From the sequence record KT919972.1: a DNA stretch of 64,000 bases. The stretch is one strand, 5' to 3'. Below, one piece after another: positions 3,270 to 50,503 of the stretch (position 1 is the first letter of the stretch; each line of letters starts with the position of its first letter). Position numbers and translations under genes: made by a program. The notes under the pieces are model-generated. The model was not told where the DNA came from. It searched no databases and saw only the letters and a list, made by a program, of their open reading frames with translations.

Positions 3270-3270
3270 C

Positions 3271-3477
3271 ATGAACTTAGGTGAGTTCGTAACGGGGTTG
3301 TTGACATTGATTGCGTTCGGTATCGTCGCAATGTTGGTTATTCTCGGATTGTCAGTTGGCGGGCTTATCTTCGGTGCATGGCTCATCATTTCGGGTCATA
3401 CAGTCGCTGGGTGGGTTGTATTGTTCATCTCGGCGATTGTTTTCGCTTTAATAGGCACAATAATGAGGAATTTGTAA
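3271..3477 (+). CDS. Small membrane protein (2 TM)
   Basis: Two long hydrophobic segments; start MNLGEF. Confidence 0.65.
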   Translation: MNLGEFVTGLLTLIAFGIVAMLVILGLSVGGLIFGAWLIISGHTVAGWVVLFISAIVFALIGTIMRNL

Positions 3478-3767
3478 TGGCGTTACATATTTACGTAGAA
3501 GTTGACACCAATGATGGTGATTACGTTGGCGGTCTAATCGCAGCATCGAGTGAAGAAGTCGAGCGTTTTGAAACGCTTGTTCATCTTTCGGGTGATAGTC
3601 TAGCGAGTTGGACAGAAGGCGAATGCCAAGTTCGCCCGAATTCAGAAGTATACCCGCAGTTTAGCGAAAATGACATTGAGTTCATTTCCGATAAAATGCC
3701 TTACTGCGAATACGGCTTTCACACTGTTGAAAAAATTAAGATTGTTGATGTGTTGAATACTCTATGA
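3477..3767 (+). CDS. Hypothetical protein
   Basis: GAGG RBS, ATG at 3477 (MALHIYVEVDTNDGDY). Confidence 0.65.
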   Translation: MALHIYVEVDTNDGDYVGGLIAASSEEVERFETLVHLSGDSLASWTEGECQVRPNSEVYPQFSENDIEFISDKMPYCEYGFHTVEKIKIVDVLNTL

Positions 3768-18560: not shown

Positions 18561-19376
18561 ATGACAATCACTAAAGCAGAAATGAAAGCTATCGCAATCG
18601 ACCTTATGTCTGGTAACAACTTGATGAAGCGCGATCTGATTGCAGAAGGTTGGTCATTTGAATTTTCAAAACGTAAAGCTGCACTAGGTGATTGTAACTA
18701 CCGTACTAAAACGCTACGTATTTCTGAAGAATTCTTGAACGCTCGTACTAAAGAAGAGCAAATCAACACAATCACTCACGAAATGGCTCATGCGATTGCT
18801 TACACTGATTACAACGAACGTGGTCACGGTGCTATCTGGAAGCGTGTACACCGTCAACTAGGTGGCGATGCAAAGCGTTGCTCAACCGTATCTAACCCTG
18901 ATGCTGTAGATAGCAAGTACGTTGTTTTCTTCGAAAACGCTCAAGGTGAACTTGAAGTAGTTCAGAAAATGGATCGTTTGACTAAGCGTTTTCAACCAGT
19001 ACACATCAAGGCTCTATACTTGAAAGGTCGTAAAGCTGAAACTGAAGGTCAACTTCGTTGCGTTGCAACATCAACATTCAACGCTATCAAAGCAGATCAC
19101 GAAGCTAAGAAAGCTGAAAATACTAAAGCAGTTGAACCTGTAGCAGCACCTGCACCGAAAGCTGAAGCGCCTAAGCCTGCTAAGAAAGTAAACGCACGTG
19201 GTCAAGCTGCTCGTGACGCAATCGCAGAAATCGTAATGAATACTACTCACAAAGGTTGTAAGTCAGTGTCATTTGAACAGCGTGGTAAATACAAAGATTG
19301 GTACATCATTATTGAACTAGAAGCTCACACAATCGAAAAGCGTCTAGACACTTTCAAAAAATCTCACGGTTTATAA
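18561..19376 (+). CDS. SprT-like zinc metalloprotease
   Basis: FSKRKAALGDC, ITHEMAHA, HG..WK motifs. Confidence 0.8.
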   Translation: MTITKAEMKAIAIDLMSGNNLMKRDLIAEGWSFEFSKRKAALGDCNYRTKTLRISEEFLNARTKEEQINTITHEMAHAIAYTDYNERGHGAIWKRVHRQLGGDAKRCSTVSNPDAVDSKYVVFFENAQGELEVVQKMDRLTKRFQPVHIKALYLKGRKAETEGQLRCVATSTFNAIKADHEAKKAENTKAVEPVAAPAPKAEAPKPAKKVNARGQAARDAIAEIVMNTTHKGCKSVSFEQRGKYKDWYIIIELEAHTIEKRLDTFKKSHGL

Positions 19377-45287: not shown

Positions 45288-45310
45288 AAAAGGGGCTTTC
45301 GCCCCTTTTT
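45288..45310. terminator. Bidirectional intrinsic terminator
   Basis: aaaaggggc-tttc-gccccttttt between convergent genes. Confidence 0.85.
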
Positions 45311-46364
45311 ATGGTCGGTAAATCATGTGATTCGACCCCATTCTCTCCCACGTACCTAGATTCATGCGATTGCGCATTTCAGCGAATAATGCTGGGTTTG
45401 CTCGTATGTCATCGAGTGGTAGTGCAACGACACCTTCAGTTTTATGTGCTAGTAGCTCAAGTTTATCTAGTAAATCACTAGAGTTGCGACCGTCGTATTT
45501 AAACTGACTAAACCAATAACCAATCTTACTAAATTTCTGATCTCTGGTGTATCTTACATCAAATCCTTTCAACGAATACTTCAAACTACTTTCTTTACCT
45601 TTGAACGGCTGTCTCGACTCGCTGTGTTCAGCACCCGCACGTGAGATCAATCGTTTCTTAGCATCACTTGGTATATTTTCCCACCCATCAAAGTTGTGTT
45701 TAAATCGATTAATCCATGCCTGAGCAGTAGCTGGTGAATTTTTAAAATCTGCTTTAGTATCAGCGATAGCTTGAGCATAACGAGCGTTTATCTCATGCGA
45801 ATAGTTCTGATATTCGTCGTGAGTCGCTTTGTGTCCGCTTTTAGCGTGACGGATGAACTCTTTGTCGATGTAAGCTCTATTGCGCCCTGAGTGTTGATAC
45901 ACACCCTCTTCGTCGCGTGTCTCGAAGTCTTCTATATCACCAGAACGCCAGTTATCATAAGCATGTTGCAGTTCATGCAATGCAGTGCTGTACATTTGCT
46001 CTTTCTTGACTCTAAACTTAGCCATAATCTGACTCACCGCAGTAACACCGGTTATATCAACGGTGATTTGCAAGTTCCCTGCTTCACCTGCTTCTGGGTC
46101 GTGTAAAGCACCGCGCCAAACACCCATTTCGGTTGGGTTTTGGTTATCAAGTTTAAGATAAGCAACGATACCACGCGCAAGAAGCGCATCGAACTCAGTT
46201 TCACCAGTTTTGATGTTCAGATTCTTGGTATTAAGTGCGAGTTTGTTCGGGTCGAATGGTGGGCTACTCAGAGCAGCTTCTAATTGTGTTTCAAGCTTAT
46301 CGACGATAAACTTAGATGCGTACTCTAATGCACGCTGCGATTGAACGCTTTCAAAAATAATCAT
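45309..46364 (-). CDS. Zincin-like metallopeptidase, candidate injected protein
   Basis: ALHELQHAYD plus downstream Y.N..HEINAR; N-terminus MIIFESVQSQRALE; minus-strand CCTAAATA upstream. Confidence 0.7.
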   Translation of the reverse strand: MIIFESVQSQRALEYASKFIVDKLETQLEAALSSPPFDPNKLALNTKNLNIKTGETEFDALLARGIVAYLKLDNQNPTEMGVWRGALHDPEAGEAGNLQITVDITGVTAVSQIMAKFRVKKEQMYSTALHELQHAYDNWRSGDIEDFETRDEEGVYQHSGRNRAYIDKEFIRHAKSGHKATHDEYQNYSHEINARYAQAIADTKADFKNSPATAQAWINRFKHNFDGWENIPSDAKKRLISRAGAEHSESRQPFKGKESSLKYSLKGFDVRYTRDQKFSKIGYWFSQFKYDGRNSSDLLDKLELLAHKTEGVVALPLDDIRANPALFAEMRNRMNLGTWERMGSNHMIYRP

Positions 46365-47536: not shown

Positions 47537-47776
47537 ATGGGCGAATTTTTATTTCTTATGTTCATTATCACGTTTGTAATTTCAAACATCATCGCGATTT
47601 TCATGGGTCTGCATATAATATTCGAACGAACATACAATATACCCATGATTATGGTCATGTTATATGGCTTCATCGGTACGCTACTCGTAGCAACTGTCAT
47701 GTCTATTCTGTTCGTCTTATGTAAAATCGAAGAAACAGAATTTTGGCGAAAAATTTCTAAAATGAGGGAAATCTAA
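47537..47776 (+). CDS. Small membrane protein
   Basis: Two hydrophobic segments. Confidence 0.6.
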   Translation: MGEFLFLMFIITFVISNIIAIFMGLHIIFERTYNIPMIMVMLYGFIGTLLVATVMSILFVLCKIEETEFWRKISKMREI

Positions 47777-47886
47777 TGAAAAACATTATTCTAGTAGATC
47801 ATAAAGAACCGACGACTGCAATCGCCGTCAAATGTGATGTAGTTGAGCAGAAACAATATTTCGACTTAGAGATACGTGGACTATGA
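47776..47886 (+). CDS. 36-aa hypothetical peptide
   Basis: GAGG RBS; start and stop overlap both neighbours. Confidence 0.45.
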   Translation: MKNIILVDHKEPTTAIAVKCDVVEQKQYFDLEIRGL

Positions 47887-48164
47887 GTTTTGAAACAAAG
47901 ATTGTATGTTACGGTGCACTTGTAACAGAAGTTGAGCATGGTTGGGGTTCTCGCCCAGACGGCTACATCATTGCGAAAAGCGAAGCTGAGGTGCTTAAAA
48001 AAGGCGCTGAAATGCGAGAAATCGCTTCTAAGTCGAAGTACGGTTATGAATATATCGGTGAAGTGTTCACATTTGAACCAACTCAAAAGGCTATCGATAA
48101 GTTAACTGATAACGAGTTTGTTTGGACTGGTCGAGACTTCTCTGAATGGGGCAAGCGAATTTAA
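47883..48164 (+). CDS. Hypothetical protein
   Basis: TEVEHGWGSRPDGY. Confidence 0.7.
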   Translation: MSFETKIVCYGALVTEVEHGWGSRPDGYIIAKSEAEVLKKGAEMREIASKSKYGYEYIGEVFTFEPTQKAIDKLTDNEFVWTGRDFSEWGKRI

Positions 48165-48172
48165 AAATATTA

Positions 48173-48216
48173 TGAAACTAGTTTAATATCAACGACATGA
48201 TGTTATACTAGTTTCA
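48173..48216 (+). promoter_or_regulatory. Class II promoter inside a long inverted repeat
   Basis: G-TTTAAT-N16-TATACT; tgaaactagt (48173-82) / actagtttca (48207-16). Confidence 0.6.
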
Positions 48217-48293
48217 CATTGCAGCAATGTACTGCAATTCGCGTCTGGTTAGGTTGTACAGATAAAATAAAACTTAAAAATAATAGGTATAAA

Positions 48294-49670
48294 ATGAAAA
48301 AACTTTGGCTTTCATTAGCATTGTTATGTTCTACAGCGTCAACAACAGCGGCTACATTCACGGGACTACCTGCTGAGGGTGTTGAAACCCCGAGTCCTTT
48401 CACAACTGAGTTCACGTTCCCTTACATGACGAACGGCTATCATAACTCAGTGTTACGTACTTGGTTAAACAGCGCGATGCAAGAAGCAGACGCTGAATAT
48501 AAGAAAACAGGTGAAATCAGTCAGACCGTTAACAGTACTTACATTTCGATGGATAGTAACGGTTACGGGTTCTGGAAAGATTCAACTGACATGCGTACAA
48601 TGTCACCGAGTGATGACATGCGTGCTCTTAGTACACTTGCTATGGCACCATTGAAATGGGCGTGTTCGGTATCTGGTAGCGCATGTTTCGACAGCGGTTT
48701 TGAGTACTCGCTTCGTATGAATGCAGACTCAAGTAAGTTTGATGTGAATGGCTCGCTTGATGTGGGTTGGGCTAACTTACGTCGCGAGAGCTGTCGCTAT
48801 CAGCTCGGTAAGCGTGTATGTTACACAGTAAACGACATGAACTACGGTGGTGACCTAGCGGGCTTCTGGATCAAAGCGTTGAACTGGTTGAATACGACTG
48901 AAGATCTATCAAACATCAAGACATCAATTGACCAAGCGACCAAGACGTTTGACCGCCCTTACTTGATGGTTAATGCAACGTTAATCCCGGGCATGGGTGG
49001 TGATGGTAATCTATCATACTTCCACATGGCAGACTCTAAGTGGTGGGAAACATGGCAAAAGCAAGTGAACTCGAACTCAGTTCAAGTTGGTTACAAACTA
49101 GCCTTAATTGAACCGATTCTGACTGGTAACAGTTCTGGTCTATATCAGACATACTCACCGCAGACTGACGATCTACGAAACTTCCCGCACTTGGAAGGTC
49201 GTATTCCACTGTATGAATACAGCTCAGTACGTGCAATTGAGATTTTGAAGATGCAGCGTGAAAACGCATTGATCGGCGCGTCGATGAAAGCATATGCAGG
49301 GTTCAATAACAACTTCGAGTCGTGCCGTGCGAACATGATCATGACAGGCGATGAAGGTTACTTACCTGCACCTGGTTATTCAGGTGGCGTCACTTCAATT
49401 TACGGTGTTGCACCGTCATACGACGAACACACAACCTTTGCGATTTTCGCATGGGCGGCAAACACCAAGTCTGAGTCGAAGATGTACGATCTTGCAAACT
49501 ACGACCACAACACTCGCGTATTCTTACACGAAATCGGTCATAACTACGGCTACGGTCATAACTCAACACCGAACACAGATCAATACTGGAAAGATTTGAG
49601 CGAAGAGCGTGTTCCGTACGTACGCTCTAAGATTGATAAGGGCGAACATTGCGGTGGGCGCGTACTTTAA
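48294..49670 (+). CDS. Exported zinc metalloprotease-like protein
   Basis: Sec-type signal MKKLWLSLALLCSTASTTAA; C-terminal HEIGHNYGYGH (HExxHxxGxxH). Confidence 0.75.
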   Translation: MKKLWLSLALLCSTASTTAATFTGLPAEGVETPSPFTTEFTFPYMTNGYHNSVLRTWLNSAMQEADAEYKKTGEISQTVNSTYISMDSNGYGFWKDSTDMRTMSPSDDMRALSTLAMAPLKWACSVSGSACFDSGFEYSLRMNADSSKFDVNGSLDVGWANLRRESCRYQLGKRVCYTVNDMNYGGDLAGFWIKALNWLNTTEDLSNIKTSIDQATKTFDRPYLMVNATLIPGMGGDGNLSYFHMADSKWWETWQKQVNSNSVQVGYKLALIEPILTGNSSGLYQTYSPQTDDLRNFPHLEGRIPLYEYSSVRAIEILKMQRENALIGASMKAYAGFNNNFESCRANMIMTGDEGYLPAPGYSGGVTSIYGVAPSYDEHTTFAIFAWAANTKSESKMYDLANYDHNTRVFLHEIGHNYGYGHNSTPNTDQYWKDLSEERVPYVRSKIDKGEHCGGRVL

Positions 49671-49892
49671 TGATTTAGTGGCGGCGATTGTCGCCACTCT
49701 AAAACGAGGTTATTATGAGAAAGCATGAAATACGAGATATGGTTGAACGTCAAGGGTTCATTCTGAACGAAGAAATTGACGAACACAATCAATCACTCTG
49801 GCAGATAAAAGACAACGGTCAAGTTGTTTACGAATCGTATAATGAATATTGCCTTGAGGCATTTCTCAAAGGTGTTAGATATTCAGAACAGT

Positions 49893-49914
49893 AAGCGCCT
49901 TTATGGCGCTTTTT
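49893..49914 (+). terminator. Probable intrinsic terminator
   Basis: aagcgcc-tttat-ggcgcttttt. Confidence 0.6.
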
Positions 49915-49923
49915 GAGGTTATT

Positions 49924-50229
49924 ATGAGACGACAAATCAATAGAATGAAAAACGATAATGGTGATTTCGAGCGTTATATGCGCACGCAAGCAGCTAGATA
50001 CGCTCGAAGAGAGATCATCAACAATATAGCCGATGACAATGACATCTTCTTAGTCGGTTCTTACACGATGTACAAAGATTGTGATGAAAAGGTTGTTCTT
50101 CAGCTTGTACGATACGCAGGTTACGAGCGTGCTGAAGTTAAAGCAGTGCCGATTGTCGGTAGTCTTGTTGATTGTGTTAATGTCATTCACGGTGTTGGGT
50201 TTAGAGTGGTGCTAAATAATGATAGTTAA
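49924..50229 (+). CDS. Hypothetical protein
   Basis: GAGG RBS. Confidence 0.65.
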   Translation: MRRQINRMKNDNGDFERYMRTQAARYARREIINNIADDNDIFLVGSYTMYKDCDEKVVLQLVRYAGYERAEVKAVPIVGSLVDCVNVIHGVGFRVVLNNDS

Positions 50230-50503
50230 CATTGCTCATCATTCTTTTGATGTGTACATTGGTCGCGGCACCCCGTTTGGGAACCCATTTAAATCAGGGA
50301 TTGACGGTACTCGAAGCGAAGTTATTGAGCTTTATCGCGAGTGGTTACGCATTCAATTACAAGACGACGAATTTAAAAAGCAGTTTATGCAACTAAAAGG
50401 AAAGATTCTCGGCTGTCATTGTAAGCCTAAAGCGTGTCATGGTGATGTAATATTAGAAGAACTTGATAGATTGAGCAGCCCATTAAACAATTTTATAGGT
50501 TAA
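50219..50503 (+). CDS. DUF4326-like protein
   Basis: DVYIGRG..FGNPF, LKGK.LGC.C.P..CHGDV. Confidence 0.85.
   Translation: MIVNIAHHSFDVYIGRGTPFGNPFKSGIDGTRSEVIELYREWLRIQLQDDEFKKQFMQLKGKILGCHCKPKACHGDVILEELDRLSSPLNNFIG

What the first reader, a model, noticed from the sequence alone, without database searches (positions are those of the whole stretch)
48173..49670. Signal-peptide-bearing zinc protease in a lytic phage
Seen: 458 aa with a Sec-type signal peptide and a C-terminal HEIGHNYGYGH, behind its own palindromic promoter and followed by a probable terminator, i.e. a moron-like unit. Established: HExxHxxGxxH is the three-His zinc motif; StcE/TagA mucinases (M66) use HEVGHNYGLGH as I recall it. 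Inference: an exported enzyme that could clip surface receptors, periplasmic defences, or mucin/biofilm on lysis. Similarity to M66 outside the motif is not evident.
Basis: partly seen in the sequence, partly recalled or inferred. Interest (0 to 1): 0.68.

Follow-up and report, generated by a model that had tools for sequence, protein, structure and literature searches.

The report
Phage-only exported zinc-peptidase-like early protein
A T4-like Vibrio phage carries a dispensable early gene for an exported protein with a classic zinc-protease site; its only relatives are in a few sister phages, so it is an untested phage-specific enzyme candidate, not a borrowed bacterial mucinase.

Summary
The window is Vibrio phage phi-Grn1, a T4-like phage of the ValKK3 species. 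The finding is gene phiGrn1_0220, annotated "hypothetical protein".

The CDS at 48294-49670 encodes 458 aa with an N-terminal Sec-type signal peptide, six conserved cysteines and HEIGHNYGYGH at residues 412-422. It sits behind a T4-type early promoter (GTTTAA-17-TGnTATACT) inside a 19-nt-arm palindrome. A conserved hairpin follows it, but that hairpin has no U-run.

The gene is under strong purifying selection (dN/dS 0.03-0.2). It is also accessory:
- present in ValKK3-like and nt-1-like phages;
- absent from the KVP40 clade;
- deleted in phi-ST2 and PVA23 by recombination between 10-bp direct repeats.

Profile search of 1.84 billion representatives found no relative outside these phages. Pattern-seeded scans of IMG/VR, GTDB genomes and JGI metagenomes also found none.

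Similarity to known peptidases (Reprolysin_5, M66/StcE, MMPs) covers only about 13-45 residues around the zinc site. No Met-turn methionine follows the motif. It is therefore not an M66 member and not a canonical metzincin. Two AlphaFold runs failed.

Best reading: an early, Sec-exported, disulfide-bonded zincin-type peptidase acting in the host envelope, substrate unknown.

The scan noted the same protein earlier on a sister phage (s1-161574), with the same conclusion.

The parts
48173..48216 (+). Imperfect palindrome (two 19-nt arms, 6-nt spacer) overlapping the promoter. It contains two copies of ACTAGTTT.
   Evidence: arms, 89% complementary. (-19.9 kcal/mol, z -6.3); no covariation, and the outer pairs are broken in nt-1/CZ01, so it is not conserved as a structure.
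48181..48209 (+). T4-type early (host sigma-70) promoter: -35 GTTTAA (48181-86), 17-nt spacer, extended -10 TG (48201-02), -10 TATACT (48204-09). Predicted transcription start is near 48216-48218.
   Evidence: the word occurs 5 times against 0.16 expected, all on the + strand upstream of ORFs. (both hexamers invariant in 8 phages of two genera). T4 early -35 consensus GTTTAC from PMC1524935.
48217..48293 (+). 5' leader of about 77 nt with a weak Shine-Dalgarno AGG at 48285-87. The block around 48245-48268 is nearly invariant between clades.
   Evidence: alignment. (fold not better than shuffles, z -0.6). (no Rfam family). The reason for the conservation is unexplained.
48294..49670 (+). CDS phiGrn1_0220 (ALP46986.1), 458 aa plus stop, PHROG 18844.
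   Evidence: dN/dS is 0.03-0.06 within the ValKK3 clade and 0.16-0.21 to the nt-1 clade.
48294..48353 (+). Predicted Sec signal peptide (aa 1-20). Cleavage is inferred after A19 or A20.
   Evidence: the only hydrophobic segment. (nt-1 has ASA|F at the aligned site). It fails the lipobox rule (Leu or Val at -1). SignalP was not available.
48354..48998 (+). N-terminal domain of the mature protein (aa 21-235). It is the best-conserved part (72% identity to nt-1), holds four of the six conserved Cys, and matches no known family.
49449..49571 (+). Zinc-site segment (aa 386-426), 78% identical to nt-1. It contains H412, E413, H416, G419 and H422 (HEIGHNYGYGH, nt 49527-49559).
   Evidence: Reprolysin_5, 23.8 bits, residues 388-428. 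(29.0 and 28.7 bits in nt-1 and CZ01)..
49572..49667 (+). Short, poorly conserved tail (aa 427-458, 37.5% identity) with no Met. Conserved residues are D429, Y431, W432, D434, L435, S436, C453 and the terminal RVL.
   Evidence: last Met is M397..
49677..49698 (+). 3' stem-loop (9-bp stem, 4-nt loop) with no U-run. It may be a weak terminator or an mRNA 3' stabiliser.
   Evidence: z -3.0. (100% paired in 6 phages; G-C changes to U-A compensatorily; the nt-1 clade has a UUCG loop). (not called as a terminator).
48401..49668 (+). Segment missing in phi-ST2 and PVA23: 1268 bp lying between two copies of CGAGTCCTTT in the R10Z/Va3/VH7D-type allele.
   Evidence: The remnant is a 42-aa ORF (P0003). 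It is further decayed by a 13-bp deletion in phi-ST2 and a 1-nt frameshift in PVA23.

Best explanation
phiGrn1_0220 is a real, accessory early gene of ValKK3-like and nt-1-like T4-type vibriophages.

**Proposed mechanism**
- Host sigma-70 RNA polymerase transcribes the gene from a T4-type early promoter soon after infection. This is inferred from the promoter type.
- The 458-aa product is exported by the Sec pathway. Its signal peptide is removed near residue 20. The mature protein of about 49 kDa, pI 5.3, is stabilised by up to three disulfides formed from six conserved Cys. All of this is inferred from sequence.
- The C-terminal part carries a zincin active site. H412, H416 and H422 would bind zinc and E413 would act as general base, so the protein most likely works as a zinc endopeptidase in the periplasm or cell envelope. 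It could also be released at lysis.
- The well-conserved N-terminal domain, which matches nothing known, probably provides substrate recognition.
- The substrate is unknown. The most plausible class is a host envelope protein or peptide: a receptor, a porin, another envelope protein or cell-wall peptides.

The protein founds a phage-restricted family. It shares only the zinc-site segment with adamalysin-like, M66 and MMP metzincins and lacks their Met-turn. The gene is not needed for plaque formation in the laboratory.
For: **Coding and selection**
- dN/dS is 0.03-0.06 at dS up to 0.5 within the ValKK3 clade, and 0.16-0.21 between clades.

**Promoter**
- The hexamers GTTTAA and TATACT are invariant in 8 phages.
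- The word is enriched 5 against 0.16 expected and matches the T4 early consensus (PMC1524935).

**Export**
- The single hydrophobic segment is N-terminal.
- The signal-peptide architecture is conserved despite only 55% identity there.
- All six Cys of the mature protein are invariant in both clades.

**Zinc site**
- The motif occurs once against 0.01 expected by chance.
- The segment 386-426 is 78% conserved, against about 52% for its surroundings.
- Six metzincin Pfam families hit exactly this segment. The best is Reprolysin_5 at E 6e-5. Reprolysin_5 passes its gathering cut-off in the nt-1 and CZ01 orthologs, at 29.0 and 28.7 bits against 27.
- The closest solved proteins over the C-terminal 105 aa are MMP-12 and MMP-7, at the motif only.
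- The nearest named clusters by language-model features are all small zincins. This is a lead only, with scores below 0.9.

**Accessory status**
- The distribution and the deletion remnants show it.
- phiSt2 lacks the gene and phiGrn1 has it, yet both show the same host range and the same 30-min latency (PMC4780772).
Against: - No structure could be obtained: AlphaFold2 gave pLDDT 31 and 30.
- Homology to peptidases rests on 13-45 residues around the motif.
- No Met follows the third His, so the Met-turn is absent.
- The tail after the motif is the least conserved part, at 37.5%.
- The nt-1 clade has Asp instead of the motif Gly (HELGHNYDYGH).
- No signal-peptide predictor was run.
- No RNA, proteomic or biochemical evidence exists: no RNA run holds the gene, and the genome paper does not mention it.
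Confidence: 0.6

Rival explanations
1. It is a bona fide M66 (StcE/TagA-type) mucinase or glycoprotease captured from a Vibrio chromosome. Released at lysis, it would degrade mucin or biofilm.
For: 10 of 13 residues are identical to StcE at the zinc site. The Pfam M66 and NCBIfam CpaA and Mep72 hits are weak.
Against: - M66 scores 14.1 bits against a 20.6 cut-off, over only 18 of 306 profile positions.
- hhalign gives 68% probability over 46 columns.
- No cellular homolog was found in 1.84 billion representatives, in the word search of 5.8 billion proteins or in GTDB genomes.
- The early-type promoter does not suit a lysis-time function.
Confidence: 0.04
2. It is an exported protein that does not act as a protease. 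The His-Glu-His cluster would bind metal structurally or be a relic, and the protein would act by binding. Examples would be blocking a receptor or inhibiting an incoming phage's envelope-penetration machinery, as the T4 early periplasmic protein Sp does and as the T5 lipoprotein Llp does by receptor blocking.
For: - The N-terminal domain, not the motif-bearing C-terminal half, is the most conserved region: 72% against 55%.
- The Met-turn is missing.
- The motif Gly is replaced by Asp in the nt-1 clade.
- Early promoter plus export resembles the T4 superinfection-exclusion genes (own knowledge).
Against: H412, E413, H416 and H422, with their flanks, are invariant across clades whose synonymous sites are saturated. 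The motif segment is a local conservation peak at 78%.
Confidence: 0.17
3. It is a zinc hydrolase that acts on the cell wall. It would cut peptidoglycan peptide stems or the Lpp linkage and so prime the envelope for lysis or DNA entry. This would resemble the Listeria phage-remnant metzincin Mtz, which sensitises cells to lysins.
For: A secreted metzincin of phage origin that alters the cell wall and enhances phage-mediated lysis is documented (PMC8235301). The periplasmic location would put the protein next to the wall.
Against: - No match to the known peptidoglycan peptidase families M15, M23 or M74.
- No TIMP-like partner gene exists. The flanking genes are also kept in phages that lack this gene.
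- Expression looks early rather than late.
- phiSt2, which lacks the gene, has the same latency.
Confidence: 0.12
4. It is a virion-associated or otherwise cytoplasmic protein, and the N-terminus is not a functional signal peptide.
For: No signal-peptide predictor and no localisation data. Other phages do package zincin-like proteins (earlier scan notes).
Against: - The N-terminus has a classical n-h-c layout, with a canonical ASA|F site in nt-1.
- Six conserved Cys.
- An early, not late, promoter type.
- The gene sits in a block of small early genes, not in a structural module.
Confidence: 0.04

Closest known systems
Pfam PF13688 Reprolysin_5 / M12-like (adamalysin-type) bacterial metzincins
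   Same: This is the best family match. It aligns the strand and active-site helix before the motif together with HExGHNxGxxH. The nt-1 and CZ01 orthologs pass the curated cut-off, at 29.0 and 28.7 bits against 27. The length left after the match (30 aa) is close to what remains of the profile (33 positions).
   Different: Only profile positions 111/123-163 of 196 align. phi-Grn1 itself scores 23.8, below 27. There is no Met-turn methionine. The N-terminal domain of about 215 aa is unrelated. The family is found only in phages.
StcE/TagA, peptidase family M66 (E. coli pO157, Vibrio cholerae)
   Same: Nearly the same zinc signature: FLHEIGHNYGYGH against FSHEVGHNYGLGH, 10 of 13 identical. Both are exported proteins.
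   Different: There is no similarity outside the motif. StcE is about 900 aa, with Ig-like insertions and a much longer region after the motif (own knowledge). It is annotated on pO157 as a ToxR-regulated lipoprotein. This protein is 458 aa and ends 36 residues after the third His.
Matrix metalloproteinases MMP-12 / MMP-7 (M10)
   Same: These are the closest solved structures by sequence over the last 105 aa: HEIGHSLGLGHSSDP against HEIGHNYGYGHNSTP.
   Different: E is about 0.08-0.1 and the match is motif only. MMPs have the Met-turn 8 residues after the third His (own knowledge). This protein has Gln (Ser in nt-1) at that spacing.
Listeria monocytogenes Mtz, a secreted metzincin in a phage-remnant locus (PMC8235301)
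   Same: It is a phage-derived, secreted metzincin-type protease that acts on the producer's own envelope and influences phage-mediated lysis.
   Different: Mtz works with a TIMP-like lipoprotein partner under a CI/Cro switch in a Gram-positive host. Here there is no partner gene, the phage is lytic and T4-like, the promoter is of early type, and no sequence relationship was shown.
T4 early or periplasmic exported proteins (Imm, Sp, antiholin RI)
   Same: T4-type phages do export proteins through Sec into the periplasm, to control superinfection and lysis. The cleavable signal peptide of RI is documented in PMC8385771 (abstract seen). The roles of Imm and Sp are from my own knowledge.
   Different: Those proteins are small binders with no catalytic motif. 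This is a 49-kDa protein with a zinc-peptidase site.

Membership tests
Metzincin clan (MA(M)) | Extended zinc motif HEXXHXXGXX(H/D) | tested here: met
   HEIGHNYGYGH at 412-422. Both His of HEXXH, the Glu and the third His are invariant in 7 orthologs. The nt-1 clade has Asp at the Gly position (HELGHNYDYGH).
Metzincin clan (MA(M)) | Met-turn: a conserved methionine downstream of the third zinc ligand | tested here: not met
   The last Met is M397. There is none in the 36 residues after H422 in any ortholog. The tail is the least conserved part, at 37.5%.
Metzincin clan (MA(M)) | Catalytic fold (five-stranded sheet, active-site helix, C-terminal subdomain) | tested here: inconclusive
   AlphaFold2 gave mean pLDDT 31.2 on the full length and 30.1 on residues 236-458. 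Fold search was not run on these models.
Metzincin clan (MA(M)) | Zinc-dependent peptide-bond hydrolysis | not testable with these tools
   Needs purified protein and an E413A control.
Peptidase M66 (StcE/TagA/dictomallein), PF10462 | Profile score at or above the curated cut-off (20.6 bits) over the M66 domain | tested here: not met
   14.1 bits over profile positions 193-210 of 306. 15.6 bits in the VH7D record.
Peptidase M66 (StcE/TagA/dictomallein), PF10462 | Similarity to StcE beyond the zinc signature | tested here: not met
   BLASTP aligns 13 residues only. hhalign gives 68% probability over 46 columns.
Pfam Reprolysin_5 (PF13688) | Score at or above the gathering cut-off (27 bits) | tested here: inconclusive
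   phi-Grn1 scores 23.8. The nt-1 and CZ01 orthologs score 29.0 and 28.7. In every case only about a quarter of the profile (positions 111/123-163 of 196) is aligned.
Sec/SPase I-exported proteins | Basic n-region, hydrophobic h-region, small residues at -3/-1, no lipobox | tested here: met
   K2 and K3; LWLSLALL core; TAA|T here and ASA|F in nt-1. It is the only hydrophobic segment. The residue at -1 before C12 is Leu or Val, which breaks the lipobox rule. This is rule-based inspection only; SignalP was not available.
T4-type early promoter | -35 GTTTAC-like hexamer, about 17-nt spacer, GT-rich stretch and TATAAT-like -10, upstream of an ORF on the same strand | tested here: met
   GTTTAA-17-(TGT)TATACT, 85 nt upstream of the ATG. 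Enrichment is 5 against 0.16 expected. Invariant in 8 phages. Consensus from PMC1524935. The transcription start was not mapped.
Moron-like accessory unit | Own promoter and terminator; present or absent between otherwise collinear relatives | tested here: inconclusive
   The promoter and the indel pattern are met. The 3' element is a conserved hairpin without a U-run, so autonomous termination is not shown.

The most novel reading that the evidence does not exclude
The protein founds a new zincin family without a Met-turn, used by T4-type vibriophages as an early, Sec-exported 'envelope-editing' protease. It would cleave a host outer-membrane or periplasmic protein, for example the phage receptor. 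That would exclude superinfecting phages or keep progeny from being lost on cell debris. To my knowledge no such protease-based, receptor-destroying mechanism has been described for tailed phages of Gram-negative bacteria.
Probability: 0.15. Interest if true: 0.75.

Novelty: new variant of a known kind. Interest (0 to 1): 0.45.

Why it matters
Most early accessory genes of T4-like phages have no assigned function, and very few are predicted enzymes that leave the cytoplasm. An early exported zinc peptidase would be a new way for a lytic phage to remodel its host's envelope. Possible effects are superinfection exclusion, receptor destruction, wall priming or attack on envelope-located defence.

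The phages concerned (phi-Grn1, ValKK3, R10Z, Va3) are candidates for phage therapy in aquaculture, so an unannotated secreted protease is also relevant to their safety and efficacy dossiers.

Nature has supplied comparators. phi-ST2 and PVA23 are clean deletion variants on the same host, which makes the question directly testable.

At present the case rests on a sequence motif and export signals only.

Tried and rejected
**Structure**
- AlphaFold2 on the two-sequence alignment gave pLDDT 31.2 for the full length.
- It gave 30.1 for residues 236-458.
- The models are unusable.

**Homology searches that found nothing**
- PDB sequence and profile searches gave nothing significant: galectin-10, VHH and Ski2 noise for the whole protein, and MMP hits at the motif only for the tail.
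- The ESM Atlas holds the sequence without a model. Its feature neighbours score below 0.9 and serve as leads only.
- Outside the phage family there was nothing in the word search of 5.8 billion proteins, the exhaustive profile search of 1.84 billion representatives, IMG/VR, GTDB genomes or JGI metagenomes.
- The last three scans are seeded with only two short peptide patterns each, so they could miss distant relatives.
- The big search reports only E <= 0.001 for the whole library. Motif-level relatives would not show up.

**Expression**
- Sequencing-run search found no RNA run. It found only DNA or metagenome runs holding 20% or less of the sampled words.

**RNA families**
- Rfam found no family in 47700-50000.

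**Readings rejected**
- Lipoprotein: the lipobox rule is broken and Cys12 lies too close to the N-terminus.
- The upstream TTG start at 48219 (483 aa): indels in nt-1 break that frame, and a Shine-Dalgarno AGG sits before the ATG at 48294.
- The palindrome as a conserved RNA or DNA structure: there is no covariation and it is broken in the nt-1 clade.
- M66 membership.
- A dedicated partner or inhibitor gene: the neighbours are conserved whether or not this gene is present.

- The genome search 'own' failed because the assembly is not held.
- The T4 genome review PMC150520 is not held.
Full report
**Identity of the window.** Megablast places the region at 100% identity on Vibrio phage phi-Grn1, KT919972.1. 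This is a 248.6-kb T4-like phage (Straboviridae, Schizotequatrovirus valkk3) isolated on Vibrio alginolyticus V1. Window position equals record position minus 124000. The finding is gene phiGrn1_0220 (ALP46986.1), deposited as "hypothetical protein". The genome paper does not mention it (PMC5107563).

**Observation.**
- *ORF and start.* The ORF from ATG 48294 to the stop at 49670 gives 458 aa. The longer TTG-started frame (48219) is not credible. Indels in the nt-1 clade break it, and an AGG Shine-Dalgarno lies 6 nt before the ATG.
- *Signal peptide.* Residues 1-20 have the n-h-c layout of a Sec signal peptide and are the only hydrophobic stretch in the protein. The nt-1 ortholog ends its signal with a canonical ASA|F.
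- *Zinc motif.* HEIGHNYGYGH lies at 412-422. The pattern HExxHxxGxxH occurs once in all six frames of the window, against 0.01 expected in shuffles.

**Regulatory surroundings.**
- *Palindrome.* The arms at 48173-48191 and 48198-48216 are real: 89% complementary, and z = -6.3 if folded as RNA.
- *Promoter.* What the palindrome contains is a T4-type early promoter: GTTTAA, a 17-nt spacer, then TG-n-TATACT. The word GTTTAM-N16-18-TATAMT occurs five times in the window, against 0.16 expected. All five are on the coding strand, in the gaps before ORFs. GTTTAC is the published T4 early -35 consensus (PMC1524935). Both hexamers are invariant in eight phages from two genera.
- *Palindrome as a structure.* The outer part of the palindrome is broken in nt-1 and CZ01 without compensation. 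The promoter is therefore the conserved element, not the hairpin.
- *3' hairpin.* A 9-bp G+C-rich hairpin (49677-49698) follows the stop codon. It is 100% paired in six phages, with one G-C to U-A double change and a UUCG loop in the nt-1 clade. It has no U-run, and the terminator scan does not call it. It may be a weak terminator or an mRNA 3' stabiliser of the kind common in T4; that comparison is my own knowledge.

**Is it a real gene?** Yes. Nei-Gojobori dN/dS is 0.03-0.06 within the ValKK3 clade at dS up to 0.5. It is 0.16-0.21 against the nt-1 clade, where dS is saturated.

**Distribution.**
- *Carriers.* tblastn finds the gene in 12 phage records. At 96-100% identity these are phi-Grn1, ValKK3, VH7D, R10Z, R11Z, Va3 and XZ1. 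At 63% identity they are nt-1 and CZ01 (genus Mylasvirus).
- *Non-carriers.* The flanks are shared by 48 records. The KVP40 clade and the V. splendidus and V. crassostreae phages have other small ORFs in the slot, with no promoter gap.
- *Deletion variants.* phi-ST2 and PVA23 keep the promoter, the leader and the first 36 codons, then jump to the end of the gene. The junction lies exactly between two copies of CGAGTCCTTT. These copies are 1268 bp apart in the R10Z, Va3 and VH7D allele. The remnant is decaying: a further 13-bp deletion in phi-ST2 and a 1-nt frameshift in PVA23.
- *Phenotype of the natural variants.* phiSt2 (gene lost) and phiGrn1 (gene intact) were isolated on the same strain. 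They show identical host range on 25 strains and the same 30-min latency. Burst sizes are 97 and 44 (PMC4780772). The two phages differ elsewhere, so only dispensability can be concluded.
- *Conclusion.* The unit behaves as an accessory, moron-like cassette inside a block of small early genes of unknown function.

**What the protein is.**
- *Family scans.* Pfam gives only sub-threshold hits, all on residues about 386-428 and all to metzincin families. They are Reprolysin_5 (23.8 bits, E 6e-5, cut-off 27), Reprolysin_3, _2 and _4, M66 (14.1 against 20.6) and M10. The nt-1 and CZ01 orthologs just pass the Reprolysin_5 cut-off at 29.0 and 28.7 bits, over profile positions 111-163 of 196. NCBIfam gives weak Mep72 and CpaA hits at the same place. 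PHROGs places the protein in family 18844, of unknown function.
- *Comparison with StcE.* BLASTP aligns 13 residues and hhalign gives 68% probability over 46 columns.
- *Comparison with solved structures.* MMP-12 and MMP-7 are nearest for the last 105 residues, at the motif only.
- *Searches for relatives.* Nothing outside the phage family was found by the word search, the exhaustive profile search of 1.84 billion representatives, or pattern-seeded scans of IMG/VR, GTDB genomes and JGI metagenomes. There is no sign of a Vibrio donor.

**Departures from a canonical metzincin.**
- *No Met-turn.* No methionine follows the third His. The last Met is M397.
- *Weakly conserved tail.* The 32-residue tail after the motif segment is the least conserved part, at 37.5%.
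- *Gly replaced.* The nt-1 clade has Asp in place of the motif Gly.
- *What is conserved.* The motif segment is a local conservation peak at 78%. The four catalytic residues are invariant. The N-terminal domain (21-235) is 72% conserved, holds four of the six invariant Cys and matches nothing known. Six invariant Cys in the mature part fit an oxidising, extracytoplasmic location.

**Structure.** Two AlphaFold2 runs failed, with pLDDT 31 and 30, because the alignment has only two informative rows. The fold is unresolved. I did not run fold searches on these models.

**Mechanism.**
- *Shown.* The gene is real and under selection. It is dispensable. It has an early-type promoter, export-type sequence features, and a conserved His-Glu-His-His site that resembles metzincins only locally.
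- *Inferred.* The gene is transcribed early by host RNA polymerase. The product is exported by Sec, cleaved near residue 20 and forms disulfides. It binds zinc through H412, H416 and H422 and hydrolyses peptide bonds with E413 as base. It acts on an envelope or periplasmic substrate recognised by the N-terminal domain.
- *Confidence.* I give this reading 0.6.
- *Rivals.* An exported binder with a non-catalytic site, 0.17. A cell-wall-directed hydrolase like Listeria Mtz (PMC8235301), 0.12. A true M66 mucinase, 0.04. A virion or cytoplasmic protein, 0.04.

**Novelty.** The kind of protein, a secreted zincin, is known. The family is new, restricted to phages and atypical in lacking a Met-turn. 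An early exported protease has not, to my knowledge, been characterised in a T4-type phage. I add five points:
- the missing Met-turn;
- the Gly-to-Asp change in the nt-1 clade;
- the Reprolysin_5 threshold pass in that clade;
- the deletion mechanism in phi-ST2 and PVA23;
- the analyses of the promoter and the 3' hairpin.

Interest is moderate at 0.45: a good, directly testable candidate, with no functional evidence yet.

Noticed in passing
window 48245-48268 (5' leader of the gene): The leader block ACGTCTGGTTAGGTTGTACAGAT is nearly invariant between the ValKK3 and nt-1 clades, although synonymous sites in the adjacent CDS are saturated (dS above 1.2). It does not fold better than shuffles and matches no Rfam family. 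It could be a protein-binding or translational-control site.
   Followed up: partly
window 45309-46364, minus strand: A 351-aa ORF lies opposite in orientation to its neighbours and is conserved in nt-1 and phi-ST2. It contains an HExxH word (ALHELQHAYD). It is PHROG 15811, of unknown function, and has no Pfam family above cut-off.
   Followed up: partly
window 18561-19376, plus strand: A 271-aa ORF carries another HExxH word (THEMAHAIAY). It matches several PHROGs of unknown function.
   Followed up: partly
window 49715-49894: The GenBank record starts phiGrn1_0221 at 49739 (51 aa). An upstream ATG at 49715 has a strong GAGG Shine-Dalgarno, gives 59 aa, and matches PHROG 14756 over positions 1-59 of 61. 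ValKK3 and Va3 annotate the longer form. The deposited start is probably too short.
   Followed up: partly
window 13354, 19493, 23722, 54519 (+ strand): Four further exact matches to the T4-type early-promoter word GTTTAA-N17/18-TATAAT. They could seed an early-promoter map of this phage.
   Followed up: no
window 50219-50503: A DUF4326 protein (95.6 bits), the counterpart of T4 nrdA.1. It is conserved in KVP40 and nt-1 and marks the conserved right border of the variable slot.
   Followed up: no
L014 (PVA23) 370-700 and L002 (phi-ST2) 3270-3590: The two deletion variants share one 1268-bp deletion between 10-bp direct repeats. They then diverged by a 1-nt frameshift in PVA23 and a 13-bp loss of the hairpin's left arm in phi-ST2. 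This is a small worked example of gene decay in a T4-like phage.
   Followed up: yes
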